This document shows positions 2,176-57,310 of a DNA stretch of 64,000 nucleotides, piece by piece (positions within the stretch are counted from its first letter, which is position 1; every line of letters begins with the position of its first letter). Location of the stretch: the sequence record OP380604.1; one strand, written 5' to 3'. A model generated the notes under the pieces. It saw only the letters and a program-made list of their open reading frames with translations, was not told the origin of the DNA and ran no database searches. A program made the position numbers and the translations under genes.

Positions 2176-2214
2176 GCTAAATAGAGTCATATCACCTAAT
2201 TGGAATGACTCTAT
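2176..2214 (+). promoter_or_regulatory. Late promoter plus RBS-occluding hairpin of gene 49
   Basis: GCTAAATA (2176-2183) overlaps the left arm of a 10-bp inverted repeat ATAGAGTCAT (2181-2190) / ATGACTCTAT (2205-2214) ending 1 nt before the ATG. This matches the known T4 gene 49 layout. Confidence 0.75.
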
Positions 2215-2215
2215 C

Positions 2216-2701
2216 ATGTTGCTTACTCCCAAAACATATGACTCCGCAAAAGAAAAACTGTATCATGAACAAAACGGAATTTGTCCGATTTGCAAACGCG
2301 AACTAGACAAAGAGATTAACAAAAATCATCTTGATCATGATCATGAACTTGACGGTCCGAATGCCGGTCGTGTTCGTGGACTCCTTTGTAATCTATGTAA
2401 CGGATCGGAGGGACGAACTCGCCACGAGTTTATGCGCTCTGGATTAGCAGGACGTGGTATCGATTACATCGAGTATCTGGAAGCGTTGTTGGCTTATCTG
2501 AAAAAAGATAGCAGCAAAAACGACATACACCCGAAACTTGTGCCTGATACTAAAAAGCGATTCGCTCGCCAAGATAAGCCAGCGATGATCGCGGAACTCC
2601 AACGCTACGGATTCGCGTATAACGACGGAATGACTAAAGCCGAACTCTGTAAAGTGTTCAACAAAGAATTTCCGAAAATGATGAAAAAACTTCATAACTG
2701 A
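2216..2701 (+). CDS. 49: Recombination endonuclease VII (Holliday junction resolvase)
   Basis: CPIC...LDHDH...VRGLLCNLCN Zn/His-Me motifs; size and C-terminal helical domain as in T4 gp49. Confidence 0.95.
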   Translation: MLLTPKTYDSAKEKLYHEQNGICPICKRELDKEINKNHLDHDHELDGPNAGRVRGLLCNLCNGSEGRTRHEFMRSGLAGRGIDYIEYLEALLAYLKKDSSKNDIHPKLVPDTKKRFARQDKPAMIAELQRYGFAYNDGMTKAELCKVFNKEFPKMMKKLHN

Positions 2702-7896: not shown

Positions 7897-7920
7897 AATC
7901 CGCCTTCGGGCGGATTTTTT
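7897..7920 (+). terminator. Terminator with CUUCGG tetraloop
   Basis: AATCCGCC-TTCG-GGCGGATT followed by a T-run. Confidence 0.85.
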
Positions 7921-8731: not shown

Positions 8732-9127
8732 ATGAAACAAGATACCATCGTTGTAATTCCAAGTCGCGAAATGGACGGTGCTACTGGTTGTCTAAGTTTC
8801 GAGCGTATGCTGAAAGAGAAGAAAGCACAGGGCTTTATTGGCGCGGTTGATCGTTTAGCAACTATCAACCACATTGCTATCGTTGACAAAGGCAACAAAG
8901 CTTATTTCGCTGATATCATCGAGATTTACAGTGGCACAGATGCCGAAAAGCAACTGAACACAAACGACATTTATTTTGACAACGTGCGTCCGATTCCACT
9001 CTCTGCTTTGAAAGAGGCTGGTATCAACGTCAACTCCGGACGTTGCTCGATTCGTTATGCCGCACTGGCTAACATCGTTGCAAATCTGAAAAAAGAAGAT
9101 ACCGAGTTACTTTCTTTGTTCGGCTAA
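8732..9127 (+). CDS. Early hypothetical protein
   Basis: Own promoter ATTGAC-17-TAGGAT with IR GGACATCC / GGATGTCC; SD GAGGA. Confidence 0.75.
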   Translation: MKQDTIVVIPSREMDGATGCLSFERMLKEKKAQGFIGAVDRLATINHIAIVDKGNKAYFADIIEIYSGTDAEKQLNTNDIYFDNVRPIPLSALKEAGINVNSGRCSIRYAALANIVANLKKEDTELLSLFG

Positions 9128-14733: not shown

Positions 14734-15255
14734 ATGGCAAATTATGTTGATAACGAGGAACTTTACCAGGCATTTGTCGCTTGGAAAGAGAAGTTAAAAG
14801 AAAACCCAAATGAAAGAATGCCCGAATTTATCGGGGGAGCGATCATGAAGATCGCAGAAGGATTTACGCATCATTGGCGATTTAATCGCTATACCGACAC
14901 ATGGAAAGAAGCAATGGTAGGTGCGGCAATCGATGTATGCTTGCGATATTGCAAGAACTTTGATACCCAGCGTTATAGTAATCCACATGCATATATTAGT
15001 ATGATCTGTGCCAGAGCCTTTTTCAATCGAATCAAATTCATGAAACAGGAAGAAGCGGCTAAATACAAATATTTCTTGGAACATGTTCACGACGGCGAAG
15101 ACGAAGACATGGCCAAACTTGTGGATGTTGCCTTCTATAATGACATGATGACGAAAGCGAATGAGTTTGAGGCTAATAGAAAGATTAAGCCCAAGAAACC
15201 CAAGCAACTCGGCGGACTGTCATTCCTTGAGGATGATGAAGATGACAGCGAATAA
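14734..15255 (+). CDS. 55: Late transcription sigma factor gp55
   Basis: NYVDNEELY...IGGAIMKIAEG...NFD..RYSNPHAYISMIC..AF..RI and acidic C-terminal tail. Confidence 0.95.
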   Translation: MANYVDNEELYQAFVAWKEKLKENPNERMPEFIGGAIMKIAEGFTHHWRFNRYTDTWKEAMVGAAIDVCLRYCKNFDTQRYSNPHAYISMICARAFFNRIKFMKQEEAAKYKYFLEHVHDGEDEDMAKLVDVAFYNDMMTKANEFEANRKIKPKKPKQLGGLSFLEDDEDDSE

Positions 15256-15866: not shown

Positions 15867-15890
15867 AAAAGGGAGCTTCGGCTCCCTTTT
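15867..15890 (+). terminator. Terminator (CUUCGG)
   Basis: AAAAGGGAGC-TTCG-GCTCCCTTTT. Confidence 0.85.
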
Positions 15891-15896: not shown

Positions 15897-15904
15897 GCTA
15901 AATA
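15897..15904 (+). promoter_or_regulatory. gp55-type late promoter
   Basis: GCTAAATA right after the terminator; the same 8-mer precedes gene 49 and both long fibre genes. Confidence 0.65.
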
Positions 15905-15927
15905 ACATAAAACATAGGAGATTTAAA

Positions 15928-16215
15928 ATGGCACAGACAATCCCAAACGTGATTGTTGGTAAAGCATGGATTTCTCTGAACGCTGCTACTGGTATTCCTG
16001 TTGGCACTCAGTTTAAAATCCAAAATTTACACCCACGAGTTGCTGGTATTTTGGCAGAGGGTACTAAGCCTGCTAACGGTTCCAGAGACGGAGAAATGAT
16101 TAACGGTAGAGTTTATTTTGGCTCGCAGGTAATCGCTGCCGCTGGTAGTTTAGAAGTATGGATTCGCTCGGAAGATGATGTTTCGAGAATCGAAATTAGC
16201 GTAGCCACGGTTTAA
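15928..16215 (+). CDS. Small putative virion protein (95 aa)
   Basis: SD GGAG and ATG 15928; late promoter upstream; beta-rich. Confidence 0.65.
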   Translation: MAQTIPNVIVGKAWISLNAATGIPVGTQFKIQNLHPRVAGILAEGTKPANGSRDGEMINGRVYFGSQVIAAAGSLEVWIRSEDDVSRIEISVATV

Positions 16216-16226
16216 GGAGATAACAA

Positions 16227-18533
16227 ATGCCATTTATTGTAATGGGAGGTGGTTCTGGCGGATCTGGCGGATCATTGGTAATCCCAAATGATTTGCGATT
16301 CGCTTCGGTTGCTGAACGAGATACATTTTTCACTAATAACGCAAGTCGTTTAGTTGATGATGTTATTGTTCTGGTAACAACAGGACCGGGACAATATCAA
16401 TTGTTCCAATATAAGAAAAATGAAACTGCTTGGAAAGAAATTACTGCCGCTATTGTTGGTGCTAAAGGCGATAAGGGTAAAGACGCATTAAACGTCAAAG
16501 CACAGTATTCGGTTGACGGAACAACTTGGGTGGATGCTGCCACTAATACTACCAAGTATATTAGAACGTCGATTGACGACGGCACAACTTGGACTCCTGC
16601 ATTCAAGATTGTTTCCGATGAAGTAGTGTATCAGTATTCTCCGAACGGAACAGATCAATGGGCAGATAGTTTTGATGTTGCACAGCACAAATATGCCAGA
16701 CTGTCGATTGATGAAGGTAAGACTTGGAACGCTTCATTCAAAATTTCTGCCGATGAAATTGTATATCAATACGGAGAATCTGAAATTGGTCCTTGGAGTC
16801 TTGAGTTCAATAAAGACTTGCGTCCTTGGGGTCGTATTAGTATCGATAGCGGAAAGAATTTCAGCGCTCCTTTTAGATTCGTTGCACAAGACGGATTAAG
16901 CTTTATCGCTCAATATTCGGCGTCTGAGTTGGGTCCTTGGACTTCATTCTTCGTTGACGGTGTTCATGAATATGTTCGTTTCAGTAATGATAATCAGAAT
17001 ACTTGGACACCAGCTCAACGATTCAAAGCGGTTCCGTTTGGTGTAAACCAAGACGATAGAAATATTATTGACTTGGGTGGACACAAGATTATTTCTAATA
17101 ACGAGAATATCGCGTTTAGAAATATTTTTACAGGTGATAACTTCTATCCGGTGTGGCAGGGTATCTCAAACGACGGCTCAGCCATTTATCGTGCCGCTGA
17201 GGTAATGTTTTCGGAGCGAGTAAACAGACAACCGTTTAACGGTGATAAGGGAGCAACGTCTGTTCCGTATAATTTCACACGCGCATATCCAACACGCATG
17301 GCAATTCTCCGAATGGCATTTGTTCCGACGGAAGACTTTGTTGGGGATATTAAGTTCCAGTTGTGGTCTCAGGGTGGACTTGTTCTGATTTATTCACAGA
17401 CAATGAAAAACGCGGAACTCGTAAACGGAAGAGAATTTGTTATTAGCTATCAGGGTAATTTGTTTGTTCAACCCGGAAACATCCTTAACGTTCGAGTCGT
17501 GAAAGCAGACGGTACTCCTGTTCAAGCGTTAGCTGGTTCTACTGTTGCAACTGAGCCATGGCGAGTCGTTGATTATATGCCTATGGAACCAGTTCGTCTT
17601 ATCAACGAGAAAGACGGCAAAGATGTTGCGCGTATGCTTGAGACTTTACAGGGTGCCGAGCGTCTGAGTATTAACTCGTTGAAAGACGTTGATCAAATTA
17701 AAGTTGGATCACTGAGAGGTGATATTGACTTTAACCGAGATCTATCCCAATTTGTTCCGTCTACTAAAAACGATTACTGGAAATCGACTCGCGAAATCAA
17801 TTACGGTGGATTAGCATTCAAAATTGGCGACAAGCTGATTGCGATGCGAAATATTGCCGCAAACGAAACGATTACGACTTTGGTAGATCCAAATACTTTC
17901 TATTTGGAAAGAAACTTGGCGAACGTAGCGAAACCAGCTGAGTTGGGTCTAGTGATGCCTGGAAGAAACACACTCGTTAGCGCAACCGGTGAGCTTTATG
18001 TTCGTCCGGCTACCGCTGAAAACGACGGTGCTGTTAAACTTGGTGTTCCTGGCGGCGCGGCTAAGTTGGGAGAAGACGGTAAAGTTAGCGTGGAACAGCT
18101 TCCACCGATTGATACACTACGCCGTGTTAGTGTGAATGACGAAGCAGCGCGTCTAGCTCTTCCTGTTGCCAATCGCTTTACAATCGCTATCCAGATTGAT
18201 ACACAGGATCAGTGGTATCTTGATGCATTCTTGTTACCTAGTATCAAAGCAAACTGGGTATATGGTGGATCTGTTGCTGCTAACGTTTCGTCGTTCAATA
18301 ACAGAAACGGTAACGTTCTTCCGCAAGCCGGCGACTATACTGCCGATATGGTAGGAGCTCTAGCTAAACCAGCAACGAATGACGGCAAGCGTCGCGTTGT
18401 TGTCGGTGATAAACTCGTTGAAGAAGCAATTAAGCAGGATGAAATTCTGGATACAGCAACAAATATCACGTATGTGTTAAAAATTGAAGCTGGTGTTCCA
18501 TATCTCGATCCAACAAATAGCGAAGATGTTTAA
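16227..18533 (+). CDS. Putative fibre/appendage protein with collagen-like triplets and Asp-box repeats
   Basis: GAKGDKGKD; four SxDxGxTW-like repeats; C-terminal VNDEAARLAL...VSSFNNRNGNV motif typical of phage fibres. Confidence 0.65.
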   Translation: MPFIVMGGGSGGSGGSLVIPNDLRFASVAERDTFFTNNASRLVDDVIVLVTTGPGQYQLFQYKKNETAWKEITAAIVGAKGDKGKDALNVKAQYSVDGTTWVDAATNTTKYIRTSIDDGTTWTPAFKIVSDEVVYQYSPNGTDQWADSFDVAQHKYARLSIDEGKTWNASFKISADEIVYQYGESEIGPWSLEFNKDLRPWGRISIDSGKNFSAPFRFVAQDGLSFIAQYSASELGPWTSFFVDGVHEYVRFSNDNQNTWTPAQRFKAVPFGVNQDDRNIIDLGGHKIISNNENIAFRNIFTGDNFYPVWQGISNDGSAIYRAAEVMFSERVNRQPFNGDKGATSVPYNFTRAYPTRMAILRMAFVPTEDFVGDIKFQLWSQGGLVLIYSQTMKNAELVNGREFVISYQGNLFVQPGNILNVRVVKADGTPVQALAGSTVATEPWRVVDYMPMEPVRLINEKDGKDVARMLETLQGAERLSINSLKDVDQIKVGSLRGDIDFNRDLSQFVPSTKNDYWKSTREINYGGLAFKIGDKLIAMRNIAANETITTLVDPNTFYLERNLANVAKPAELGLVMPGRNTLVSATGELYVRPATAENDGAVKLGVPGGAAKLGEDGKVSVEQLPPIDTLRRVSVNDEAARLALPVANRFTIAIQIDTQDQWYLDAFLLPSIKANWVYGGSVAANVSSFNNRNGNVLPQAGDYTADMVGALAKPATNDGKRRVVVGDKLVEEAIKQDEILDTATNITYVLKIEAGVPYLDPTNSEDV

Positions 18534-18540
18534 TAAATAT

Positions 18541-18569
18541 AGCCACCTTCGGGTGGCTTTTTATAAATA
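18541..18569 (+). promoter_or_regulatory. Terminator plus T4 consensus late promoter
   Basis: AGCCACC-TTCG-GGTGGCTTTT, then TATAAATA at 18562-18569. Confidence 0.8.
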
Positions 18570-18593
18570 AATCAGAATTACCAAGGAGTTCAT

Positions 18594-20471
18594 ATGTCAA
18601 GAATAAATCTGGTAACCCACCCAGAAAAAACTACTGAACCCAAAGTGTGGGTTGACGGTAAGTGGGATAATGTATCGAATACAAAAATCGTTCAAGCGCA
18701 AGCTAACGGAAAAATAAATAAGGATTTATTGCCGGAGGATGTCGGAGGAGTTGTCGCTCCTAGATGGGATCCGGCAGTTATGTATCAAGAAGGGGATTTG
18801 GTTTACCACAACCACAAAGTTTATCGATCTTTTGGACAAAATCAGGGGGGATTTCTCGAAGTAATAGATGACCCAAACACACCAGAAGACGTTAAAGCTA
18901 GAGTTGGGTTCACTCTGGTTTCAGACGATGGAACATCATACGCAACTACGTGGACACAATGGCAACAGTCCGGTAAATTCTTTAAAGAAGGTCAGCTATT
19001 CGAACACTTCGGTGCTTTATATCGAGCAAAACAGGCTGGAATAAATCAAGAAATATCCAATCCTCTGTATTTTGATAAGATATCTGGATATGTTCCTCCT
19101 AGAACATGGAATTCAAACTTTTCGTTTGCACAGGGAGAACTAGCACAATATCAGGGAACGATGGTACAGGCAAACGGAACAATAAACGGAGGAACACAAT
19201 TTAGATGGGGAACATCAGGAACATCTTTTAGGCCACTGTTGAGTTCGAATAACTATCCCTTGCGATGGATTGGCGTTGCAGATTCAACAACAAGTTATTC
19301 CGTTGGCGATGTTGTTGCTCAATCTAACGTCTCGTATATTCTTTATGTGTGTACTTCTCCTGGAACATTCTCATTAGTAAACGGACTTCCTGACTCGGAG
19401 AAATGGGCACCTCTAATTGAGAGTAAGCCTGTCATTGTCCAAGCGAAAGCTCCTCCGGTTCAAGTAATAAACGCCCGCAACTGGGATTTTAATGTAGCGT
19501 ATTCTATTAACGACATTGTGACGTATAACGGAGTTGTTGTTCGTTGTAAAAATCCAGTTGGTCAGAGCGTGCAATTTTCTTATTCTAACTTCGAAGAAGT
19601 TGGTGCCAATGCATTCGTAAAGGCTAAAAACTGGGAAGCAAATAGACCATACGATTTAGGAACAATTTGTTTCCAAAACGGCGAAATGTATATGGCAAAT
19701 AGCAACTTGGCAGCAACCGGTTCATTTAACGTTGGATTTACCGGAGCGACTTGGAAAAGAATAAGTCCCGATCCTGCTCCAATTATTCCAGACTGGACAA
19801 GCACAGTTTTTTATTTCGCAGGATCCACGGTCCGTTATAACGGAGAAACATACCTTGCTAGATCAAATATTTCCTCAGGAACTGCTTGGAACTTTGCAAA
19901 CTGGCAGCGGATTTCGGACACACGAGTATTCGGAGATATGAAACAAGGTTTTATGACTTCGAATCACGACGGCTGGTATTTGTGTAACGGTGCTGCTATT
20001 ACTACTCTACCGACAAACGCTAGAGCGAGAGCCAGTTCGTTAGGATTCACAAGTACATTGCCGGATATGCGGGATCGTGTTCCTGTTGGTGTGGGATCTA
20101 CTCACGCGCTAAGAGTTGCATATGGAAGCAACTTCATTGCACAGAACAACTTGCCTAATGTCACGGTATCTTTCAGCGGAAGCGGTAGCGGCACAACTGG
20201 AGGCGCATCGAGTACAGCGCAAGTTCTAGGCCTTTCTAATAACCCTATTGTTTATTTTACGGATAACGGTGGTAGTTGGAGTGGAACAGGATATCGTGTT
20301 CCTAACTTCTCTAGCTATGCTAACTTCTACAGTTACAGCACAAGTCACACTCATAGCTTTAGTGTGAGTGTTAGCGGATCAACTAGCTCTATTAACGGTG
20401 GCGTTAGTCAACAACGTTTCGAACAACCTGGACTGGGTGTTAACTTCTTCATCTATCTAGGTCTTGATTAA
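18594..20471 (+). CDS. Fibre/adhesin with about 7 CBM5/12-like repeats and a C-terminal tail-collar domain
   Basis: Repeats such as WDFNVAYSINDIVTYNG and WTSTVFYFAGSTVRYNGETY; collar motif GDMKQG...GWYLCNG...LPDMRDRVPVG. Confidence 0.7.
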   Translation: MSRINLVTHPEKTTEPKVWVDGKWDNVSNTKIVQAQANGKINKDLLPEDVGGVVAPRWDPAVMYQEGDLVYHNHKVYRSFGQNQGGFLEVIDDPNTPEDVKARVGFTLVSDDGTSYATTWTQWQQSGKFFKEGQLFEHFGALYRAKQAGINQEISNPLYFDKISGYVPPRTWNSNFSFAQGELAQYQGTMVQANGTINGGTQFRWGTSGTSFRPLLSSNNYPLRWIGVADSTTSYSVGDVVAQSNVSYILYVCTSPGTFSLVNGLPDSEKWAPLIESKPVIVQAKAPPVQVINARNWDFNVAYSINDIVTYNGVVVRCKNPVGQSVQFSYSNFEEVGANAFVKAKNWEANRPYDLGTICFQNGEMYMANSNLAATGSFNVGFTGATWKRISPDPAPIIPDWTSTVFYFAGSTVRYNGETYLARSNISSGTAWNFANWQRISDTRVFGDMKQGFMTSNHDGWYLCNGAAITTLPTNARARASSLGFTSTLPDMRDRVPVGVGSTHALRVAYGSNFIAQNNLPNVTVSFSGSGSGTTGGASSTAQVLGLSNNPIVYFTDNGGSWSGTGYRVPNFSSYANFYSYSTSHTHSFSVSVSGSTSSINGGVSQQRFEQPGLGVNFFIYLGLD

Positions 20472-20475
20472 AATA

Positions 20476-20512
20476 AGGCACCTTCGGGTGCCTTTCTTAT
20501 ATCTTATAAATA
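20476..20512 (+). promoter_or_regulatory. Terminator plus T4 consensus late promoter
   Basis: AGGCACC-TTCG-GGTGCCT, then TATAAATA at 20505-20512. Confidence 0.8.
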
Positions 20513-20536
20513 AAGAAAACACTAAGGAGAATTATA

Positions 20537-22597
20537 ATGTCAAGAATAAATCTTGTCACATATCCTGTAAAAGATAATAATCCAAAAGTATGGCACGACG
20601 GTCAGTGGAAAAACGCTAAAGACGTTGATGTTGTTCTTTTGAATGGCGGCGAATTAGATCCAACTATTCTTCCTAGAGAAGCAAGAGTTGCAAACGCTCC
20701 TACTCATAGTCCAGACTTATCTTGGCACTCAGGAGATGTTGTTTATAGAAATGATAAACTGTATCGTGCAAATAGCGATATTCCGGAGGGAGTTGCGTTT
20801 AAAGAAGGCGACTTAGCACAACAGTGGAAACCAGTTTCAATCACAGATCAGATTCCAAATGTTCCAGAATTCAATGTATATAATCCGGGATTAGATAAGC
20901 AAATCAAAGCGGGAGAGCTATTCTTTGATAACGGTATTCTGTATCGCGCAAAGTTGAACTCTATTGGAGTCCAAGTAAATTCACCAAACTATTTTGATAA
21001 ACTGGGTGGATTTGTAATGCCTCCTGCTTTTACTACAAGCAAAACTCATTTATCCGGTGAGATTGTGAAACTGCATGGGTATTATGTCGCTGCAAATAGC
21101 GATATTCCAGCTGGAACTTCATTTGCATGGGGTTTGCCAACTCAACTCAATACATGGAGACCGGTAATTTATAACGGATTCTTACAATATAACTGGAGAG
21201 GCGTTGTTTCTTCGACATCCACATACGCTTATGGAGATGTTGTGTCCGTCACCGATAGATCTATTGCTCTTTATGTTTGTATTGCTGTGAGTGCAAACGG
21301 ATTTTCCGTAGAAACAACACCGGATTCGTCTTGGACTCTTTTGGTAAATGATACTCCTCTTATTCTGAGTCAGTATTCCAAGAAAACGGACGATGTGGTT
21401 GTAAACGATTGGGCCGTATCTCATTTGTACGCTAAAGGAACAATTGTTAAGTATACCGATGGAAAATATTATTCAGCAAACGCAGTTATACCTCCAAATA
21501 CACCATGGGCTCCTGGATTGTGGACAGAAATAGTTGATACGTCTGGATTCGCAACAAAAACGGAAGTTGAATTGATTTCAGATCAAATGAGTCTAAAACA
21601 GAATATTATTAACGGTGCTGCATCCACTATTACACTCGGCAACTTGGCAACAAACTCTGTTGTAATTACGGACGCTAACGGAAAAATAGCAGCGAATAGT
21701 AACGTGAGTGCAACAGAAGTAAGTTATTTGGACGGAGTTACATCTAATATTCAAACTCAGTTGAACGGAAAACAAAACACTATTAACGGCGCGGCTTCAA
21801 CAATAACCACTGCTAACTTGGCAACAAACTCAGTTGTTATAACTGATGGCAACGGAAAAATTGCGGTGAATAGTAATATTAGCGGAACGGAAGTAAGTTA
21901 TCTGGACGGAGTTACATCTAATATTCAAACTCAGTTGAATAATAAGATGGACAAAACTCACGTTACAATTGGATATGATCTAGTTCAGTCTGCACAACCA
22001 AGAGCGGTGTTTAGGGATAAATTCCTAACTTCCGGTCCATCAAACACAACAGTTTCGTGGCAAAACGTTCCTTGGATTTATGCAAACATAGATCAAGCAG
22101 AAAGAAGTCTACCATACTGGATCCAACAACTTGCTACTTTCTTTAAGAACTTCGAAAACGATAATCAGTTTGATCAGTTGATTGGTGGAATACCAGCTAA
22201 CTTTAGTATTCCTTTTGGATCATGGGGTGTTGCTCCTAGTGGTTCGACCGATATGGACAACGCGATTTTGTCGGCTTCTGGTAACTACGGGGCTGAGGTA
22301 TTTGAGTTTATTGTTGGAAGAAGTCCGTCTGGGAACGAGATATACACGTTCCAATTTACATTTGCGTTACAGACATCTGGACCAAGTGACGCGAGCGGTG
22401 CTATGTATCCGTTCAGAATGATATATCAGACAGGGAGAAACCAATCAACACACAACTGGTCCGGAACCGTAGTCGGTGCTATCGCATCGTCTGTTCCTCG
22501 TTGCACTGCAAGACCTTCCAGCTTTACGACTGGCACATATAACGCATCTTCTTTCCCGTTGATGTATGAGCCAATCACACTAGAGATTAGTAAGTAA
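20537..22597 (+). CDS. Second fibre/adhesin paralog with CBM-like repeats and a variable tip
   Basis: N-terminus MSRINLVT.P...PKVW.DG.W.N shared with 18594-20471; EVSYLDGVTSNIQTQLN fibre repeats. Confidence 0.7.
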   Translation: MSRINLVTYPVKDNNPKVWHDGQWKNAKDVDVVLLNGGELDPTILPREARVANAPTHSPDLSWHSGDVVYRNDKLYRANSDIPEGVAFKEGDLAQQWKPVSITDQIPNVPEFNVYNPGLDKQIKAGELFFDNGILYRAKLNSIGVQVNSPNYFDKLGGFVMPPAFTTSKTHLSGEIVKLHGYYVAANSDIPAGTSFAWGLPTQLNTWRPVIYNGFLQYNWRGVVSSTSTYAYGDVVSVTDRSIALYVCIAVSANGFSVETTPDSSWTLLVNDTPLILSQYSKKTDDVVVNDWAVSHLYAKGTIVKYTDGKYYSANAVIPPNTPWAPGLWTEIVDTSGFATKTEVELISDQMSLKQNIINGAASTITLGNLATNSVVITDANGKIAANSNVSATEVSYLDGVTSNIQTQLNGKQNTINGAASTITTANLATNSVVITDGNGKIAVNSNISGTEVSYLDGVTSNIQTQLNNKMDKTHVTIGYDLVQSAQPRAVFRDKFLTSGPSNTTVSWQNVPWIYANIDQAERSLPYWIQQLATFFKNFENDNQFDQLIGGIPANFSIPFGSWGVAPSGSTDMDNAILSASGNYGAEVFEFIVGRSPSGNEIYTFQFTFALQTSGPSDASGAMYPFRMIYQTGRNQSTHNWSGTVVGAIASSVPRCTARPSSFTTGTYNASSFPLMYEPITLEISK
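21597..21944 (+). repeat. 174-bp (58-aa) tandem duplication within the fibre gene
   Basis: GAAGTAAGTTAT.TGGACGGAGTTACATCTAATATTCAAACTCAGTTGAA starts at 21716 and at 21890. Confidence 0.85.
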
Positions 22598-22598
22598 T

Positions 22599-22622
22599 AA
22601 AGCCACCTTCGGGTGGCTTTTG
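22599..22622 (+). terminator. Terminator (CUUCGG)
   Basis: AAAGCCACC-TTCG-GGTGGCTTTT. Confidence 0.85.
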
Positions 22623-22679
22623 TTTACTATTCAAATAAAGTGTGCCATAATTAGGTTATGAAAAACTAAAAGAGGTATC

Positions 22680-23243
22680 ATGAGAGTAATAATGCTATTA
22701 GGTATTCCTGGCGCAGGAAAAACTACCTATATGTATTCGCTTGTAGATAAATTCAATCCGGATGCAAGAAATAAAATAGATTGTCCTTCTCCAAAAGGAG
22801 CAACGGTTAGTTATACCAAGTTCAACGATAAGATTTGTGCCATAGGAGCATATGATCGAAATAAGAAATGTAGGAGTTCAAATCATACATATCATTGTTT
22901 CGAAACAACTCCTGCCGTGCAATTTTATAGTGCATTGCAATATTCTTTAGAACAACTCGAATCTATGGGATATGAGTATGTTATTTTGGACGGCCATAAG
23001 CCTGTCATAGAGTATAAGCGACTTAAATACGATTTTGTGTTGGTAGAGTTTCCTATCGATGAAGCATTAGCAAGACAGAGATATGAGAATCGGTGCGGAA
23101 AAGATTACGACGCTATGGGAACAAAGTATCAGGAAAAGATCAAGGAAGTTCTTTCTCTTGACAAAGAGCGGTGGACGAAAGAAGAGTTGGAACAATACAT
23201 CGAACAAACTGGATACATCAAAGCTAAGACGCTTGACATTTGA
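22680..23243 (+). CDS. P-loop nucleotide/DNA kinase-like protein
   Basis: LLGIPGAGKTT Walker A at the N-terminus, VILDG Walker B-like, LARQRYENR lid-like motif. Confidence 0.6.
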   Translation: MRVIMLLGIPGAGKTTYMYSLVDKFNPDARNKIDCPSPKGATVSYTKFNDKICAIGAYDRNKKCRSSNHTYHCFETTPAVQFYSALQYSLEQLESMGYEYVILDGHKPVIEYKRLKYDFVLVEFPIDEALARQRYENRCGKDYDAMGTKYQEKIKEVLSLDKERWTKEELEQYIEQTGYIKAKTLDI

Positions 23244-23286
23244 GCCACCTCCGGGTGGCTTTTTCATATGGTAGTGGCTTGTCCAC

Positions 23287-27454: not shown

Positions 27455-28132
27455 ATGCAACTGAGCAAAGAAACCGTAGAAATCCTGTCTAACTTCGCAA
27501 AAATCAACCCGTCTGTGGTACTGAAACCTGGTACTTTTGTCAACACCAAGAGCGTGAACAACGTTCTGTATGCCGAAAGCACCATCAAAGATACCGTAGA
27601 TAGTGAGCTGCGAATCTACAGTCTCGGTGAATTCTTGGGTGTTGCTGCGATGGTTGGTCTGCCTGCTGATGTTACCGAAGACGGTGAATATATCACTATC
27701 AAGAATGCATCCGGTGGCAAAGCTATGGCAAAAATCAAAATGGCAGAAGCCGGTACTATCGCACATCCGAAGAAAGCACTGACCATGCCAACTGCTTCCG
27801 TTGTGTTCGAGATTACTGCCGAGCAACTGAAACAAATCGACAAATCTGCCTCTACTATGTCCCTGGTAGATCTGCACTTTGTCAACGACGGTCGTAAGAT
27901 TATCGCTCGTCTGACCGGCGGTGAAAGCAACTCCAACAGCTTTGAGATTGCTATTGCTGATGACTTCGAAGGCGACGACGCTACTTTTGATTTCATCGTT
28001 GCGATTGGTAACATGAAGATGATCGACGGCAAATATACCGTGATGATCGCAAAAGAAGGCGCAATCTGCTTCAAGGGTGCAACTGCAAGCTATATCATTG
28101 CAATTGACTCCAAATCCAAGTACACTGCTTAA
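27455..28132 (+). CDS. 45: Sliding clamp gp45
   Basis: MQLSKETVEILSNFAKINPSVVLKPG..., IYSLGEFL; synteny. Confidence 0.95.
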   Translation: MQLSKETVEILSNFAKINPSVVLKPGTFVNTKSVNNVLYAESTIKDTVDSELRIYSLGEFLGVAAMVGLPADVTEDGEYITIKNASGGKAMAKIKMAEAGTIAHPKKALTMPTASVVFEITAEQLKQIDKSASTMSLVDLHFVNDGRKIIARLTGGESNSNSFEIAIADDFEGDDATFDFIVAIGNMKMIDGKYTVMIAKEGAICFKGATASYIIAIDSKSKYTA

Positions 28133-29191: not shown

Positions 29192-29773
29192 ATGTCTCTC
29201 GCCTGTTTTATGGACGAAGAAGATTTAAACGAGCATGAGATTGCATGGCGTTCCAGGGATTGGAACGCTGTAAAAGAGCTTGCCAAGCAGTTTAAGGTAC
29301 CGGCTGAACAATCCCTGTTCGAAATAATCGATAACGTTACACAGAAGCGGGGACACGGCACAGTTGATCGATTCTCTGATTACGATCAACATGCAATAAA
29401 CAATGCTCTGTCCCAGCATGTTACCATGAGTGGTTATGCTTCTGAACTGAATTCTATGGAAGGGTTTATTAGCGATCAGATGCATTACGATTACCTGTAT
29501 TTTACTGTTCGGAAGTGTAGTCTACCGAAAGTAAAGTTCGCTAAACTCACGGACGATTGGGAACAAAGAGTATTCGAATACCTTGTTTCTGATTATTACG
29601 AGGTCTCGATTCCACGAGCCAGAGAATATATTGATTATTTTTCTGATGAACAAATCAAACGGTTAAAGAAAATGTTTTCTCCTACCGTTAATGACGTCAA
29701 CGCCCGTTGCTTGACTGTTATCCCAACTAAAACTGAGCGCGAAAAAATTCAACGCGCTATCCGATCTTGGTAA
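29192..29773 (+). CDS. 62: Clamp loader small subunit gp62
   Basis: INNALSQH, HYDYLYFTVRK; start at ATG 29192; synteny 44-62-regA. Confidence 0.9.
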   Translation: MSLACFMDEEDLNEHEIAWRSRDWNAVKELAKQFKVPAEQSLFEIIDNVTQKRGHGTVDRFSDYDQHAINNALSQHVTMSGYASELNSMEGFISDQMHYDYLYFTVRKCSLPKVKFAKLTDDWEQRVFEYLVSDYYEVSIPRAREYIDYFSDEQIKRLKKMFSPTVNDVNARCLTVIPTKTEREKIQRAIRSW

Positions 29774-30338: not shown

Positions 30339-33039
30339 TAACGGTATCAGTCGAAGTCGAAAAGTTAACTTTGGCCCAACGCTGTACAAGCATAGCAACA
30401 ACGGCGAGTTGAAAGACATTTACGGAAAGCCAGCTACGGCAGTTGAGTTCGATAGCATTGGCGATGCCAGACGCTGGATGAAAGATATGCGAGACATTAA
30501 TCGCGAGCCACTTGGCATGGACGATTTTGTTCTCCAATATCTGTATCACACCTATAGCGGTCCAGTTTCGTTCAAGTATGAGCAAATTGATATTGCGTTT
30601 GTGGATATCGAGGTCCCGACTGACGGACCATTCCCCGAACCTCATATCTGTGACTGGGAAATTGACGGCATCTGCCACTACAGCACAAAACGCAAACGGT
30701 ATTCACTGTTTACTACTCGTCCGTGGGACAAGGCCAAATCGATTCTTGATAAAGACGACAAGGGTAACGCTGTTGATATCTTAGAGCGTGTGGATTACGT
30801 GTTCTGTGAGTCTGAGCGCGAGCTTTTGATCCGGTATCTCAAGTTCTTTAGAGACAACACCCCGGATGTTTTCTCCGGTTGGAACTCTGAAATGTTCGAC
30901 TTGCGTTATATCGTAAACCGGTATCGTAAAGTTCTTGGTGATGTATATGCGAACAAGCTTAGTCCTTGGGAACAAATCATCGAGCGTACTGTTTTCAAAG
31001 ACGACGACGAAGGTGAAGAAGCCGAAGAGATCGTGACGTATGAATTGCTTGGCATTGCTTGTCTCGATTACATGGCAGCTTACAAGAAATTCACGTTTAA
31101 GACTCGTCCGACTTACAAGTTGGATTACATCGGTCAGATTGAACTCGGCATGAAAAAGCTGGATCTTACCGAGAAAACATACTTGGCATTCAGTCAGAAA
31201 AACCCACAGAAATATATCGACTATCTTATCCGAGACGTTGATTTGTTGGTTAAACTTGACGCTCGTTTGTCTTTGATGGCGCTGATTACCAGCGTAAGTT
31301 ATTACGCAAAGATCAACTATAACAACACCTTTAGTCCTTTGAAGACTTGGGACGCGATCATTCATAACAGTCTGATTGAACAGGGTATTGTTGTGCCAGA
31401 AAACAAGCGTACTTCTAAAGTCAAGTATGCGGGCGCGTTTGTTAAAGACCCAGTTACGGCGTTTTATCGCTGGATTCTGAGTTTCGACTTAACATCCCTG
31501 TATCCACACTTGATCATGGGTTGGAACATTAGCCCAGAGACTATTGTTGATTGCTATGATGTTCCTCGCATTTTCGTGAAAGACCGCATGGTGCCAGATA
31601 TCGTTGGCATGGGACTTGTTGACAAGAAATTCCAAGTTCCAAATGATGATATGTCATTCGCTGCTAACGGGATGCGTTACACCAGAAAGAAACGTGGTAT
31701 TATCCCGACTGAAATCGAAAAAGTGTTCTTGCAGCGTAAAGCCGCGAAGAATGCCGAGTTTACAGCGGATAAGATTGCGACAATCGCTTGGGATACAATC
31801 GTTGACCGCAAAGATAATAATATCGCAGATACCAATATTGAGTTCGACGCACACGGCATTGATCTCTCTATTAAGGGAGAAGCGTTTGATAATTTCGTCG
31901 CGAATCTGAAAACGTTCAACAACGAATCTCTACATGGCATCGTTGATTACTGCCGATTCATGGAGAAACTCGAAAACGTTAACCAACAAGCACGTAAGGT
32001 ACTTATCAACTCACTTTATGGTGCATTGGGCAACGAACACTTCCGTTATTATGACGTTCGAAATGCAGAAGCGATTACCATGAGTGGTCAATTTGCGATT
32101 CGTTGGATCATGCGGAAGATGAATGAATACATGAATGCGCTGTGTCAGACTAAAGACGTGGATTATGTCGTTTACGGCGATACTGACTCCATTTATCTGA
32201 CGTTTGAAAAGTTCGTTAATCTCATGGCAGCGAAGAAGGGTATTCAAGTCGGTGACATTGAAACTATTCGTTGGGTAGATTTCCTTGCTAAGTTTGCCAA
32301 AGAGAAATGTGAGCCGTATATCGATCAAAGCTATCGCGAACTCGCAGAATATGTCCAGTGTTATGATCACAAGCTGTTCATGGACCGAGAAATCATCGCT
32401 GATACTGCTTTCTGGACTGCTAAAAAGCGGTACGCTGCTAACGTGTGGGACTCAGAAGGTAAGCGCAAGCTTGACGAACACGGTAACGTTGTTCCGAAGT
32501 TGAAGATCATGGGCATTGAAACTCAACGTTCTAGCACACCGGTATTCGCTGGTAAATCGCTGGAGAAGAGTATCAAGCTGATCCTGACTAAGGGTGAGAA
32601 GGCAATGCAAGACTACGTTAAGGAAGTCAAGGCCGAGTATCCCAAGCGCGATTATCGAGAGATTGCGGCAGTATCGAGTGCAAACAACATCGAAAAGAAT
32701 CACAACAACTGGGTACCGGTTAAAGGTTGTCCGGGTCACATCAAGGGAGCACTCGCTTACAACAAAGTGGCAGAGCAGCGAAACCTTGACATGATTCGAA
32801 GCGGCGAGAAAATCCAGATCGTGATGTTGAAAGAGCCGAATCATATTCATTCTCCGGTACTTGCTTTCCCGAGTGGTGACAAGATTCCAGATGAATTTAA
32901 TCTTGATTTGTCTAAATATCTCGATTTCATGGGCATGTATCAAAAGCATTACCTGAAACCACTCGAAAATATCTGTAATGCGATTGGCTGGGAAACTGAG
33001 AAAGTATCCAGTCTGTCTGATCTTTTCGGTGATATGTAG
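30280..33039 (+). CDS. 43: Family B DNA polymerase gp43 (single chain, TTG start)
   Basis: DIEV exonuclease motif, SFDLTSLYP, NSLYG, YGDTDS; SD GAGG precedes the TTG. Confidence 0.98.
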   Translation: MFYTNVCIQGNTVLERYVDDNGISRSRKVNFGPTLYKHSNNGELKDIYGKPATAVEFDSIGDARRWMKDMRDINREPLGMDDFVLQYLYHTYSGPVSFKYEQIDIAFVDIEVPTDGPFPEPHICDWEIDGICHYSTKRKRYSLFTTRPWDKAKSILDKDDKGNAVDILERVDYVFCESERELLIRYLKFFRDNTPDVFSGWNSEMFDLRYIVNRYRKVLGDVYANKLSPWEQIIERTVFKDDDEGEEAEEIVTYELLGIACLDYMAAYKKFTFKTRPTYKLDYIGQIELGMKKLDLTEKTYLAFSQKNPQKYIDYLIRDVDLLVKLDARLSLMALITSVSYYAKINYNNTFSPLKTWDAIIHNSLIEQGIVVPENKRTSKVKYAGAFVKDPVTAFYRWILSFDLTSLYPHLIMGWNISPETIVDCYDVPRIFVKDRMVPDIVGMGLVDKKFQVPNDDMSFAANGMRYTRKKRGIIPTEIEKVFLQRKAAKNAEFTADKIATIAWDTIVDRKDNNIADTNIEFDAHGIDLSIKGEAFDNFVANLKTFNNESLHGIVDYCRFMEKLENVNQQARKVLINSLYGALGNEHFRYYDVRNAEAITMSGQFAIRWIMRKMNEYMNALCQTKDVDYVVYGDTDSIYLTFEKFVNLMAAKKGIQVGDIETIRWVDFLAKFAKEKCEPYIDQSYRELAEYVQCYDHKLFMDREIIADTAFWTAKKRYAANVWDSEGKRKLDEHGNVVPKLKIMGIETQRSSTPVFAGKSLEKSIKLILTKGEKAMQDYVKEVKAEYPKRDYREIAAVSSANNIEKNHNNWVPVKGCPGHIKGALAYNKVAEQRNLDMIRSGEKIQIVMLKEPNHIHSPVLAFPSGDKIPDEFNLDLSKYLDFMGMYQKHYLKPLENICNAIGWETEKVSSLSDLFGDM

Positions 33040-36848: not shown

Positions 36849-36881
36849 TCCCCTTTTCATAAATAAGAGTTTGGAGGTGTT

Positions 36882-37349
36882 ATGAGTGCAAAGACGATTA
36901 TGGATGCGGTTTACGCATACCGTTTAGCTACTCTATTAGGGAAATCTTTCTCTAAGTGGGAAGCGCATAAGCTAGGTATCATTGACGATCAAGGCAACGT
37001 GTTGCGACGTCCTGAGACTCCCAGAGAAAAATCGCATTATACCAAGTTTCATAGCATGGTAAGAAGTCTGAAACAGACAATTCAGCGATTTAGTGGTGGG
37101 TTTGGGACGACTGCATTGGCAGTGAAGATGGGGTGGAACGCCGTTATCAAAGAATATGGCGAGCCGGATCTATCTCGGATGCCGCTAGTTGAGTGTGAAG
37201 AAGATAGCGATTTGCACAAGCTGATCGAAATGGTCTCCGGTGATTGTGGTGGCGATGCTACTAAGATCGCAACTGGCGAGAAAAGTGGTTCTGTTACAGA
37301 TATGAGCGCTGGACAGACGAAAAAGATTGATAAGAAAAAGAAAAGCTGA
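36882..37349 (+). CDS. Conserved T4-like protein (often annotated 61.1), late promoter upstream
   Basis: AYRL..LL.K.F..WEA.KLGIID..G..L...YT.FH..V..LK family; CATAAATA at 36858-36865. Confidence 0.7.
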   Translation: MSAKTIMDAVYAYRLATLLGKSFSKWEAHKLGIIDDQGNVLRRPETPREKSHYTKFHSMVRSLKQTIQRFSGGFGTTALAVKMGWNAVIKEYGEPDLSRMPLVECEEDSDLHKLIEMVSGDCGGDATKIATGEKSGSVTDMSAGQTKKIDKKKKS

Positions 37350-46989: not shown

Positions 46990-47015
46990 AAAAGCCACCT
47001 TCGGGTGGCTTTTTT
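46990..47015 (+). terminator. Terminator (CUUCGG)
   Basis: AAAAGCCACC-TTCG-GGTGGCTTTTTT. Confidence 0.85.
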
Positions 47016-53126: not shown

Positions 53127-53145
53127 ATTATCTCCTTTAAAAGAA

Positions 53146-53165: not shown

Positions 53166-53170
53166 ATTAT

Positions 53171-57309: not shown

Positions 57310-57310
57310 A

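What the first reader, a model, noticed from the sequence alone, without database searches (positions are those of the whole stretch)
15897..22622. Late-expressed four-gene fibre/appendage island at the alpha-glucosyltransferase locus
Seen: between a-gt.4 and gene 47, where T4 has alpha-gt, there are four genes (95, 768, 625 and 686 aa) with TAAATA-type late promoters and CUUCGG terminators, embedded in an otherwise early replication block. They carry collagen-like, Asp-box, CBM-like, tail-collar and fibre-repeat motifs. Inference: an accessory virion appendage (head or neck fibre, or a branched receptor-binding complex) separate from the canonical 34-38 fibres.
Basis: partly seen in the sequence, partly recalled or inferred. 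Interest (0 to 1): 0.7.

Follow-up and report, generated by a model that had tools for sequence, protein, structure and literature searches.

The report
Accessory late fibre-gene cassette in phage
A T4-like Aeromonas phage carries, inside its early replication genes, a dispensable four-gene cassette with late promoters that most likely builds extra host-binding fibres; close copies follow the tail-tip gene of phage-like elements in Aeromonas genome contigs.

Summary
The window is Aeromonas phage avDM12-TAAL (T4-like, Straboviridae). Four + strand genes (95, 768, 625 and 686 aa) lie between a-gt.4 and a small early gene that precedes gene 47. There are three transcription units, each bounded by a CTTCGG stem-loop terminator. 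Each starts with a T4-type late promoter: GCTAAATA, the published Aeh1 late consensus, once, and TATAAATA twice.

The proteins look like fibres. ORF2 has a conserved N-terminal anchor domain, Asp-box repeats and a widespread C-terminal module. ORF3 and ORF4 are paralogues with a shared N-terminal region of about 300 aa, rich in CBM5/12-like repeats, and different C-terminal heads. ORF1 is a small beta-sandwich (phrog_4770) that recurs beside ORF2-like genes in unrelated phages.

ORF2 has full-length relatives (61-63% identity) in two Aeromonas genome contigs. There it directly follows a lambda-J-like tail-tip gene and is followed by an ORF3/4-type fibre, which is a side-fibre position. The cassette is intact in Aeh1, deleted or decayed in Ah1, phiAS5 and phiWae14, and absent in PX29. 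ORF1 and ORF2 are under purifying selection.

The best reading is an accessory, horizontally exchanged receptor-binding fibre module. Presence in the virion and the attachment site are unproven. Interest is moderate.

The parts
14734..15255 (+). gp55 late sigma factor gene. It is the trans-acting factor expected to read the island's promoters and is not part of the island.
   Evidence: GenBank annotation. 98.3% aa identity to Aeh1 gp55.
15867..15890 (+). Left boundary terminator after a-gt.4: a stem-loop with a CTTCGG loop followed by a T run.
15897..15904 (+). Late promoter P1, GCTAAATA (Aeh1-type late consensus), 19 nt before the Shine-Dalgarno sequence and ATG of ORF1.
   Evidence: The same motif precedes this phage's long-tail-fibre genes. 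The consensus is published (PMC1524935). The Aeh1 counterpart is listed there as Pl:32097.
15928..16215 (+). ORF1, 95 aa: a small beta-sandwich protein of family phrog_4770, proposed partner of the ORF2 N-terminal domain.
   Evidence: PHROG E = 5.7e-25. AlphaFold2 mean pLDDT 84.7, eight strands. No PDB match with E below 0.04. Many uncharacterised phage look-alikes in BFVD with TM up to 0.92. ORF1-like genes lie next to ORF2-like genes in L017 and L018. dN/dS 0.19 against Aeh1.
16227..18533 (+). ORF2, 768 aa: proposed proximal or stalk fibre subunit, a mosaic of at least four modules. It is translationally close-coupled to ORF1 (11-nt gap).
   Evidence: 74% identical to Aeh1ORF027c. 61-63% identical over its full length to P0002 and P0003 in Aeromonas contigs. 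dN/dS 0.10.
16227..16457 (+). ORF2 aa 1-77: a Gly/Ser-rich tip followed by a conserved N-terminal 'anchor' domain.
   Evidence: pLDDT 91-96 for aa 20-75. The domain occurs at the N-terminus of many otherwise different fibre-like proteins. HMM hits: CW02 gp35 'putative tail fiber' E = 4.4e-15 and VP16C orf29C E = 1e-8.
16458..16484 (+). ORF2 aa 78-86: three G-X-Y triplets. This is a vestigial collagen-like linker that is longer in some homologues.
   Evidence: Low pLDDT for aa 77-88.
16494..17021 (+). ORF2 aa 90-265: array of four to five Asp-box (S-x-D-x-G-x-T-W) repeats spaced about 45 aa apart.
   Evidence: Pfam BNR is sub-threshold.
17064..17666 (+). ORF2 aa 280-480: well-predicted all-beta central domain, shared with VP16C orf29C and Aeromonas phage 1233.
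   Evidence: pLDDT 81-98..
18024..18371 (+). ORF2 aa 600-715: widespread conserved C-terminal module (phrog_16348, phrog_17153, phrog_2824 'virion structural protein').
   Evidence: No PDB sequence relative.
18541..18558 (+). Terminator after ORF2. It is the left copy of the identical stem-loop pair that brackets ORF3-ORF4.
18562..18569 (+). Late promoter P2, TATAAATA.
18594..20471 (+). ORF3, 625 aa: proposed distal receptor-binding fibre A.
18594..18674 (+). ORF3 aa 1-27: conserved N-terminal docking motif, shared with ORF4, Aeh1 ORF025c and ORF026c, and the fibres of L009 and L010.
   Evidence: Alignment A7, invariant K17 V18 W19 G22 W24. HMM hits occur only in these loci.
18765..19892 (+). 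ORF3 aa 58-433: array of CBM5/12-like repeats.
   Evidence: Pfam PF02839 E = 3e-17, three stretches. Motif count. Weak PDB hit to a tail spike protein, gp124, 8fqc.
19965..20468 (+). ORF3 aa 458-625: C-terminal head with a weak tail-collar-like signature and a Gly/Ser-rich tail. It is unique to this phage.
   Evidence: Collar E = 0.07. phrog_8469 'tail fiber' E = 8.5e-6. No counterpart in Aeh1.
20475..20494 (+). Terminator after ORF3.
20505..20512 (+). Late promoter P3, TATAAATA.
20537..22597 (+). ORF4, 686 aa: proposed distal receptor-binding fibre B, a paralogue of ORF3 over its first 306-311 aa (32% identity).
21595..21939 (+). ORF4 tandem repeat of two 58-aa fibre-shaft units (81% identical at the DNA level).
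   Evidence: phrog_16122 'virion structural protein'.
21734..22594 (+). ORF4 aa 400-686: C-terminal head, 67% identical to the C-terminus of the 613-aa fibre of the A. salmonicida contig element.
22599..22620 (+). Right boundary terminator, the right copy of the identical stem-loop. The early-type promoter of the next gene follows at 22623-22651.

Best explanation
The island is an accessory, horizontally exchanged receptor-binding fibre cassette. It is made late in infection, together with the other virion parts.

Shown by sequence:
- There are three late-type transcription units (ORF1-ORF2, ORF3, ORF4), insulated by terminators.
- The proteins have a modular, fibre-like make-up.
- ORF3 and ORF4 are paralogues.
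- The cassette is shared with phage-like elements in Aeromonas contigs, where it follows the J-like tail-tip gene.
- The cassette has been lost in close relatives.
- ORF1 and ORF2 are under purifying selection.

Inferred mechanism: gp55-RNA polymerase transcribes the units late. ORF2 forms an elongated, presumably trimeric stalk whose conserved N-terminal domain anchors it to the particle, probably with the small beta-sandwich ORF1 as partner or adaptor. ORF3 and ORF4 use their shared N-terminal motif and region to dock on the same kind of site, most simply on ORF2. They present two different C-terminal heads plus CBM5/12-like repeats that bind surface glycans. This would give the phage extra or alternative ways to adsorb to Aeromonas surfaces, alongside the canonical long and short tail fibres.

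The repeated stem-loop and promoter units serve as recombination joints through which fibre genes are gained, lost and swapped.
For: Late wiring:
- The motifs sit 19-21 nt before a Shine-Dalgarno sequence and ATG.
- The same CTAAATA motif precedes this phage's long-tail-fibre genes.
- CTAAATA is the published Aeh1 late consensus, and the Aeh1 island promoters Pl:32097 and Pl:29404 are already listed in that paper's supplement.
- gp55 and gp45 are encoded nearby.

Fibre nature:
- PHROG 'tail fiber' and 'virion structural protein' hits.
- CBM5/12 at E = 3e-17 in ORF3.
- A tandem shaft repeat in ORF4.
- Pfam Phage_fiber_rpt in 9 of 46 ORF2-family members.
- The ORF2 N-terminal domain heads many different fibre-like proteins, including CW02 gp35, which a published analysis proposes to bind an adaptor in a branched fibre.

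Side-fibre synteny:
- P0002 and P0003 are 61-63% identical to ORF2 over its full length. Each follows a 1365-1369-aa J-like gene (PF09327; phrog_31 E = 1e-62) and is followed by an ORF3/4-type fibre. One of these fibres has a head 67% identical to that of ORF4.

Shared docking motif:
- Alignment A7. The motif is found only in these phages and elements.

ORF1-ORF2 linkage:
- ORF1-like genes lie next to ORF2-like genes in two unrelated metagenomic phage contexts (three contigs, L017-L019). ORF1-like genes also precede spike-like or fibre-like genes in a podovirus contig and in phage nickie.

Accessory and exchangeable:
- Intact in Aeh1. Deleted in Ah1, whose flanks are 97% identical. Decayed in phiAS5 and phiWae14. 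Absent in PX29.
- The ORF3-ORF4 block is bracketed by identical stem-loops.
- Flanking proteins are 90-98% identical to Aeh1, but ORF1 and ORF2 only 73%. dS is 2.06 for ORF2 against 0.60 for gp47.
- dN/dS is 0.10-0.19.

Not a duplicate of the canonical fibres:
- No paralogy anywhere in nt 1-172000 of the genome.
Against: - There is no direct evidence that any of the four proteins is in the virion. No proteomic or imaging study of avDM12-TAAL, Aeh1 or a relative was found.
- Timing is inferred from motifs only.
- No solved structure or curated family places ORF1, ORF2 or the two heads.
- The whole-chain fold search for ORF2 gave only non-specific hits (TM at most 0.16).
- phiAS5 keeps an ORF3/4-type gene without ORF1 and ORF2. 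If its three frame changes are sequencing errors, that fibre does not need ORF2.
- The Aeromonas contig elements lack ORF1, so ORF1 is not always required.
- In some phages ORF1-like or ORF2-like genes lie next to the capsid gene, so a head location is not excluded.
Confidence: 0.6

Rival explanations
1. The genes encode independent fibres rather than one complex. ORF2 would be one fibre, and ORF3 and ORF4 would be two further fibres. Each would attach directly to the particle through its own N-terminal domain. ORF1 would be an assembly helper or a small cap.
For: - phiAS5 carries an ORF3/4-type gene at the same locus without ORF1 or ORF2.
- ORF2-like proteins occur in other phages without an ORF3/4-type neighbour.
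- Each unit has its own promoter and terminator.
Against: - In every genome with a close ORF2 homologue (avDM12, Aeh1, L009, L010), an ORF3/4-type gene follows directly.
- In the two relatives without ORF2, the ORF3/4-type gene is in pieces or reduced to remnants. That pattern fits dependence on ORF2.
Confidence: 0.2
2. The proteins are head or neck decoration fibres (Hoc-like or whisker-like in role) rather than tail or baseplate fibres. They would mediate loose adherence to surfaces or glycans, not primary receptor recognition.
For: - ORF1-like or ORF2-like genes lie just after the major capsid gene in L013, L017 and Aeromonas phage 1233.
- CBM-like and Asp-box repeats suit weak glycan adherence.
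- By established knowledge of the T4 map, T4 itself scatters accessory virion genes (hoc, soc) outside the main structural clusters.
Against: - The closest homologues (61-67% identity) follow the J-like tail-tip gene.
- Other contexts are tail-fibre positions: after the T7 gp16-like gene, after the tail-fibre genes in VP16C, and CW02 gp35.
- PHROG names are mostly 'tail fiber'.
Confidence: 0.1
3. The proteins are late but non-virion. They would be glycan-binding or glycan-degrading factors released at lysis, for example to keep progeny from sticking to debris or to strip capsule, or they would be a passenger cassette with no role in this phage.
For: - Carbohydrate-binding signatures occur with no structural proof of attachment.
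- The whole-chain fold search of ORF2 returned glycoside hydrolases and sialidases, though at meaningless TM scores.
- The cassette is repeatedly lost in relatives.
Against: - No catalytic domain was detected by Pfam, NCBIfam or PDB sequence search.
- The elongated repeat architecture, the shared N-terminal docking motifs and the synteny with the tail-tip gene are hallmarks of virion fibres.
- Purifying selection (dN/dS 0.10-0.19) argues against a functionless passenger.
Confidence: 0.08

Closest known systems
Lambda-type side tail fibres (Stf with Tfa), encoded just after the tail-tip gene J
   Same: In the two Aeromonas contig elements, the ORF2-like and ORF3/4-like genes occupy exactly this position after a J-like gene. 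Like Stf, the cassette is accessory, is easily lost, and has mosaic receptor-binding ends.
   Different: No sequence or profile similarity to Stf or Tfa was returned by any search. No Tfa-like chaperone gene was recognised. In the window the cassette sits in a T4-like myovirus, far from any tail gene.
Branched multi-receptor-binding assemblies with adaptor subunits (K1-5/SP6 adaptor plus two tailspikes; the CW02 gp55/gp54/gp35 model of Hardies et al., PMC4819975)
   Same: There are two receptor binders with homologous N-terminal docking regions and different heads, plus separate small and large proteins that could serve as adaptors. The ORF2 N-terminal domain matches CW02 gp35 (HMM E = 4.4e-15), one of the two proteins proposed to bind the CW02 adaptor.
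   Different: No complex has been demonstrated here. No similarity to the known adaptor proteins was found. The host virion is a contractile-tail T4-like particle that already has a full fibre set.
T4 long and short tail fibres (gp34-37, gp12) and fibritin (wac)
   Same: Late-expressed, elongated, repeat-built proteins with variable C-terminal heads. They use the same promoter type as this phage's own long-tail-fibre genes.
   Different: No detectable homology to any of them in this genome. The genes lie outside the structural gene clusters and are absent from close relatives that keep the canonical set.
Hyperplastic regions and promoter/stem-loop (PeSL) cassettes of T4-type genomes (PMC2839356, PMC4122927)
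   Same: This is a variable locus between conserved core genes. Near-identical stem-loops next to promoters flank the variable genes, and the ORF3-ORF4 block lies between two identical copies. In relatives, presence or absence follows these units.
   Different: PeSLs pair the stem-loop with an early promoter and mostly carry small genes of unknown function. Here the promoters are late-type and the cargo is 6.7 kb of fibre genes.
Aeh1 ORF028c-ORF025c (GenBank AY266303)
   Same: An orthologous four-gene island at the same locus, with predicted late promoters and terminators already tabulated in 2006.
   Different: ORF1 and ORF2 are only 73-74% identical. The two distal fibres are 1069 and 964 aa with unrelated C-terminal parts. 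The genes are annotated only as hypothetical proteins, and no functional discussion was found.

Membership tests
T4-type (gp55-dependent) late transcription unit | TATAAATA-class motif (CTAAATA in the Aeh1 group) immediately upstream of the gene | tested here: met
   GCTAAATA at 15897 and TATAAATA at 18562 and 20505, each 19-21 nt before a Shine-Dalgarno sequence and ATG. The consensus is taken from PMC1524935. The same motif precedes this phage's long-tail-fibre genes.
T4-type (gp55-dependent) late transcription unit | The phage encodes the late sigma factor gp55 and the sliding clamp gp45 | tested here: met
   Annotated at 14734-15255 and 27455-28132. gp33 was not looked for.
T4-type (gp55-dependent) late transcription unit | Transcripts start a few bases downstream of the motif and appear late in infection | not testable with these tools
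   Needs RNA-seq or 5'-end mapping.
Intrinsic (rho-independent) terminator | G+C-rich stem-loop followed by a T run at the gene's end | tested here: met
   Four sites with a CTTCGG loop. The homologous Aeh1 sites were predicted by TransTerm.
CBM5/12 (PF02839) | Score above the Pfam gathering threshold | tested here: met
   ORF3 scores 62.8 bits against 26.2, with three stretches. ORF4 scores only 17.3 bits, so the threshold is not met for ORF4.
BNR/Asp-box repeat (PF02012) | Score above the gathering threshold, or repeated S-x-D-x-G-x-T-W motifs | tested here: inconclusive
   Pfam gives 16.9 bits against 27. Four regex matches and one more by eye, spaced about 45 aa apart. A profile of the N-terminal region hits sialidase Asp-box segments at E = 0.001.
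Phage tail collar domain (PF07484) | Score above the gathering threshold | tested here: not met
   ORF3 aa 458-497 score 13.6 bits against 24, E = 0.07.
Collagen-like fibre | Long uninterrupted G-X-Y run | tested here: not met
   Only three triplets, at ORF2 aa 78-86. Some homologues have longer runs.
Lambda Stf-type side tail fibre | Gene directly downstream of the tail-tip gene J | tested here: not met
   Not the case in the window. It is the case for the closest homologues in L009 and L010.
Lambda Stf-type side tail fibre | Sequence homology to Stf, and a Tfa chaperone gene downstream | tested here: not met
   No such hit in Pfam, PHROGs, NCBIfam or PDB sequence searches.
T4 gp34-37, gp12 and wac fibres | Sequence homology to the phage's own canonical fibre genes | tested here: not met
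   tblastn of ORF1-4 pieces against genome nt 1-172000 gave nothing with E below 0.3 outside the island.
Adaptor-based branched receptor-binding complex | Two receptor binders share a docking domain | tested here: met
   ORF3 and ORF4 are 32% identical over their first 306-311 aa and have a conserved N-terminal motif.
Adaptor-based branched receptor-binding complex | Physical binding of both receptor binders to one adaptor on the virion | not testable with these tools
   Only single-chain structure prediction was available.
PeSL mobile regulatory cassette | Conserved stem-loop adjacent to an early promoter, flanking variable genes | tested here: inconclusive
   The repeated stem-loop criterion is met. 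The adjacent promoters are late-type, except for the early-like one at 22623-22651 on the right edge.
phrog_4770 (function unknown) | Profile match | tested here: met
   ORF1 E = 5.7e-25 over the whole profile.

The most novel reading that the evidence does not exclude
The fibre cassette may travel between phage morphotypes together with its own terminator and late-promoter punctuation.

The 42%-GC blocks in the Aeromonas contigs carry Dit-like, J-like, ORF2-like and ORF3/4-like genes. They could be a so far undescribed kind of element whose tail-tip and fibre genes are wired to Aeh1-type, gp55-class late promoters. All five CTAAATA heptamers of L010 lie about 30 nt before a start codon, and four of them sit behind a CTTCGG stem-loop.

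Such an element would either encode its own T4-like late transcription system on a non-T4 virion, or be a resident element that is switched on by an infecting T4-like phage.
Probability: 0.15. Interest if true: 0.75.

Novelty: new variant of a known kind. Interest (0 to 1): 0.45.

Why it matters
- If the proteins are on the virion, Aeh1-type Aeromonas phages carry a second, modular adsorption apparatus that standard T4-based annotation misses. All four genes are labelled 'hypothetical' in every record.
- This would explain part of the variation between otherwise near-identical phages.
- The analysis gives a first functional context to two widespread uncharacterised phage protein families: the phrog_4770 small beta-sandwich and the ORF2-type N-terminal anchor domain.
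- It documents the exchange of receptor-binding modules between a contractile-tail phage lineage and J-gene-bearing elements of the same host genus, apparently joined at conserved stem-loop and promoter units.

Tried and rejected
- PDB sequence searches with each protein, and with profiles of the ORF2 N-terminal and C-terminal modules. These returned only Asp-box and CBM5/12 fragments, or nothing.
- Fold search of the ORF1 model against the PDB. There was no specific match, only generic beta-sandwich, cupin and CBM folds at E of 0.04 or more.
- Fold search of the whole ORF2 model against the PDB. TM was at most 0.16, with hits to beta-propeller and beta-sandwich enzymes. I treat these as non-specific and not as evidence for an enzyme. 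Domains could not be searched separately.
- NCBIfam gave nothing.
- A search for paralogues of ORF1-4 in the rest of the genome, to infer a docking site by analogy with gp34, gp12, wac, gp9 or gp10. None was found in nt 1-172000. The last 59 kb were not fetched.
- I tested whether ORF1 is related to the C-terminus of the J-like protein or occurs in the contig elements. Neither blastp nor the HMM found a hit.
- Scans of IMG/VR and of the species-representative genomes for further ORF2 relatives found only Aeh1 itself, or nothing.
- Literature searches for virion proteomics or imaging of avDM12-TAAL, Aeh1, phiAS5 or Ah1 found nothing.
- I considered compositional foreignness of the island and rejected it. 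Its GC is 0.37-0.47, like the flanks.
- I rejected the reading of the island as a replacement for alpha-glucosyltransferase function. No transferase signature was found.


Full report
**Identity of the window.** The window is nt 1-64000 of Aeromonas phage avDM12-TAAL (OP380604.1, 231 kb, Straboviridae; host Aeromonas hydrophila), matched at 100% identity. The region around the finding is a T4-type early and replication block. It runs nrdD, nrdG, nrdC/H, gp55, a-gt.5-like, a-gt.4, then the island, then a 183-aa P-loop gene, then gp47, gp46, gp45, gp44, gp62 and regA.

**Check of the observation.**
- A stem-loop with a CTTCGG loop and a T run follows a-gt.4, ORF2, ORF3 and ORF4. The core CCACCTTCGGGTGG, allowing up to 2 mismatches, occurs 6 times in the window against 0.15 expected.
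- Directly after three of these terminators lies a late-type motif: GCTAAATA (15897) before ORF1, and TATAAATA (18562, 20505) before ORF3 and ORF4. ORF2 follows ORF1 after 11 nt with no promoter of its own, so there are three units.
- The window has only three TATAAATA octamers, and two of them are these.
- I first noticed that this phage's own long-tail-fibre genes are preceded by the same arrangement of stem-loop, CTAAATA and Shine-Dalgarno sequence. I then found that Nolan et al. 2006 derived CTAAATA as the late consensus of the relative Aeh1 (PMC1524935).
- Their supplement already lists late promoters Pl:32097 and Pl:29404, which lie upstream of Aeh1ORF028c and ORF026c. It also lists terminators between ORF025c, 026c and 027c. 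The regulatory punctuation of the homologous Aeh1 island was therefore tabulated in 2006 but never discussed.
- The gene after the island has an early-type promoter (TTTACT, 17 nt, CATAAT, at 22623-22651).
- The protein motifs are partly real. CBM5/12 is significant in ORF3. Asp-box repeats are present at motif level. The ORF4 tandem repeat is real. 'Tail collar' is sub-threshold, and 'collagen-like' is three triplets.

**What the proteins are: ORF2.** ORF2 is a mosaic.
- A Gly/Ser-rich tip and a well-predicted N-terminal domain (aa 20-75, pLDDT above 90). This domain heads many otherwise different fibre-like proteins.
- A short G-X-Y linker.
- Four to five Asp-box repeats.
- A confident all-beta central domain (aa 280-480), shared with Vibrio phage VP16C orf29C and Aeromonas phage 1233.
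- A widespread C-terminal module (aa 600-715), which PHROGs labels 'virion structural protein' or 'minor tail protein'.
- Nine of 46 family members carry Pfam Phage_fiber_rpt.

**What the proteins are: ORF3 and ORF4.** They are paralogues, 32% identical over their first 306-311 aa. They share a conserved N-terminal motif (invariant K17 V18 W19 G22 W24 in alignment A7) and arrays of CBM5/12-like units, but have unrelated C-terminal heads.

**What the proteins are: ORF1.** It is a 95-aa beta-sandwich (pLDDT 84.7) of phrog_4770. It has no solved relative but many uncharacterised phage look-alikes.

**The most informative result: genomic context of the closest relatives.**
- ORF2 has full-length homologues of 61-63% identity in an A. 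hydrophila contig and an A. salmonicida contig.
- In both contigs the gene directly follows a 1365-1369-aa J-like tail-tip gene (PF09327; phrog_31 E = 1e-62), which is itself preceded by Dit-like and tail genes. It is directly followed by an ORF3/4-type fibre gene.
- The head of the A. salmonicida fibre is 67% identical to the head of ORF4.
- The head of the A. hydrophila fibre is 63-69% identical to the fibre gene of phage phiAS5.
- This is the position of side tail fibres in lambda-like tails. It shows repeated exchange of receptor-binding heads between the T4-like phages and these elements.
- The ORF3/4 N-terminal motif is found only in these phages and elements. Wherever a close ORF2 homologue exists, an ORF3/4-type gene follows it.

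**Context of ORF1.** ORF1 is missing from the contig elements. However, ORF1-like genes or domains sit next to ORF2-like genes in two unrelated metagenomic phage contexts (L017, and L018/L019). They also lie after the T7 gp16-like gene in a podovirus contig, between the capsid and adaptor genes in another phage, and twice before spike-like genes in Pseudomonas phage nickie. This makes ORF1 a recurrent partner of such fibres, not a T4-specific part.

**Distribution and evolution.**
- Aeh1 has the same four genes (95, 773, 1069 and 964 aa).
- In Ah1, whose flanks are 97% identical, the island is gone. There are two deletions. They leave a frame-disrupted ORF1 remnant (at least one frameshift) fused to the last ~88 codons of ORF2. 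ORF3 and ORF4 are absent.
- In the window the ORF3-ORF4 block lies exactly between two identical stem-loops. This fits recombination at these repeats, as described for stem-loop and promoter cassettes in T4-type genomes (PMC2839356, PMC4122927).
- phiAS5 has one ORF3/4-type gene, annotated as four pieces with three frame changes, and no ORF1 or ORF2. This may be decay or sequencing error (my inference).
- phiWae14 has two small remnants. PX29 has nothing.
- A metagenomic contig shows another genotype in which an ORF2 tail abuts the P-loop gene.
- Between avDM12-TAAL and Aeh1 the flanking proteins are 90-98% identical, but ORF1 and ORF2 only 73%. dS is 2.06 for ORF2 against 0.60 for gp47, which indicates older or exchanged alleles. 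dN/dS of 0.10-0.19 indicates function.
- The phage keeps a complete canonical fibre set. ORF1-4 have no paralogue in nt 1-172000.

**Mechanism.** The sequence shows late-type promoters, insulated units, fibre-like modular proteins, shared docking motifs, synteny with a tail-tip gene, dispensability and purifying selection.

The following is inferred. ORF2 is a stalk anchored by its N-terminal domain, with ORF1 as partner. ORF3 and ORF4 dock through their common N-terminal region, most simply on ORF2, and present two different glycan- or receptor-binding heads. The result would be an accessory, possibly branched adsorption organelle.

I put 0.6 on 'virion-attached accessory fibres' and clearly less on the specific ORF2-plus-ORF3/4 architecture. 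The rivals are independent fibres (0.2), head or neck decoration (0.1) and non-virion late glycan-binding proteins or a passenger cassette (0.08). Nothing found bears directly on virion presence.

**Comparison with known systems.** The cassette works like lambda side tail fibres and like adaptor-based branched receptor-binding complexes. Hardies et al. proposed such a model for CW02, whose gp35 carries the ORF2-type N-terminal domain. It is not a sequence member of Stf/Tfa, of T4 gp34-37, gp12 or wac, or of any solved family (see the membership table). The locus behaves like a T4 hyperplastic region whose cassette boundaries are stem-loops, but the promoters are late and the cargo is structural.

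**Novelty and verdict.** Accessory and mosaic phage fibres are a known kind, and the Aeh1 orthologues and their promoters have long been in databases as 'hypothetical'. Four things are new here:
- the functional reading;
- the ORF1/ORF2 gene-pair family;
- the paralogous two-head arrangement in a T4-like phage;
- the link to J-gene-bearing Aeromonas elements.

I rate the finding a new variant of a known kind, with interest 0.45.

**An unexplained side observation.** The 42%-GC elements in the Aeromonas contigs abut host DNA of 58-65% GC. They use the same CTAAATA-after-stem-loop punctuation: all five heptamers in L010 lie about 30 nt before a start codon. They also share an Endo VII gene (53-60% identity) and a 119-aa gene with the phage. 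Only 10 kb upstream could be read, so their nature remains open. They could be prophages, satellites, or assembly joins with a lytic phage.

**Rule compliance.** Broken genes in relatives are described by counts only.

Noticed in passing
L009 1-16100 and L010 1-15400 (Aeromonas genome contigs JBPVIC010000006.1 and JBNXUJ010000008.1): These are 42%-GC phage-like blocks next to 58-65%-GC host genes. They hold Dit-like, J-like, ORF2-like and ORF3/4-like genes, and no tape-measure-sized gene is called in the ~4 kb before Dit. All five CTAAATA heptamers of L010 lie about 30 nt upstream of start codons, and four of them sit behind a CTTCGG stem-loop. This is Aeh1-type late-promoter punctuation on a non-T4 tail cluster.
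   Followed up: partly
window 2176-2701: An Endo VII-like gene (2216-2701) is preceded by GCTAAATA at 2176. It is 53-60% identical to the Endo VII gene of the Aeromonas contig elements. An ORF at 8735-9067 is about 33% identical to their 119-121-aa gene.
   Followed up: partly
window 7900-7913, 23242-23261, 46995-47008: Further copies of the same stem-loop terminator family (CCACCTTCGGGTGG and near variants) lie outside the island. They are possible recombination joints elsewhere in the genome.
   Followed up: no
window 22623-23243: A 183-aa P-loop (kinase-like Walker A) gene with an early-type promoter lies between the island and gene 47. It is 97% identical in Aeh1 and present in Ah1. Its function is unknown.
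   Followed up: partly
window 36858-37349: CATAAATA lies 15 nt before the Shine-Dalgarno sequence and ATG of a 155-aa ORF (36882-37349). This is another candidate late promoter inside the early region.
   Followed up: no
window 52103-64000 (- strand), continuing to record nt 69645: The canonical long-tail-fibre cluster has four very large genes (1236, 1318, 1354 and 1358 aa) plus small ones. The 1354-aa and 1358-aa genes carry GCTAAATA behind stem-loops. The lone third TATAAATA of the window (62249-62256) lies inside the 1318-aa gene.
   Followed up: partly
Aeh1 record nt 29362-29404 and 32055-32097 (PMC1524935, Additional file 5): The 2006 paper states that late promoters lie only before orthologues of T4 late genes. 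Yet its own table lists two before the novel ORFs 026c and 028c of the island.
   Followed up: yes
L004 4992-7900 (phiAS5): A single ORF3/4-type fibre gene is annotated as four consecutive pieces with three frame changes. Its distal part is 63-69% identical to the fibre of the A. hydrophila contig element. The interruptions may be real decay or sequencing artefacts (my inference).
   Followed up: partly
record OP380604.1 nt 132211-134430 (outside the window): Two unannotated genes (534 and 201 aa) lie between wac and gp13, and fibritin is unusually long (1035 aa). These are further candidates for non-canonical neck structures.
   Followed up: no
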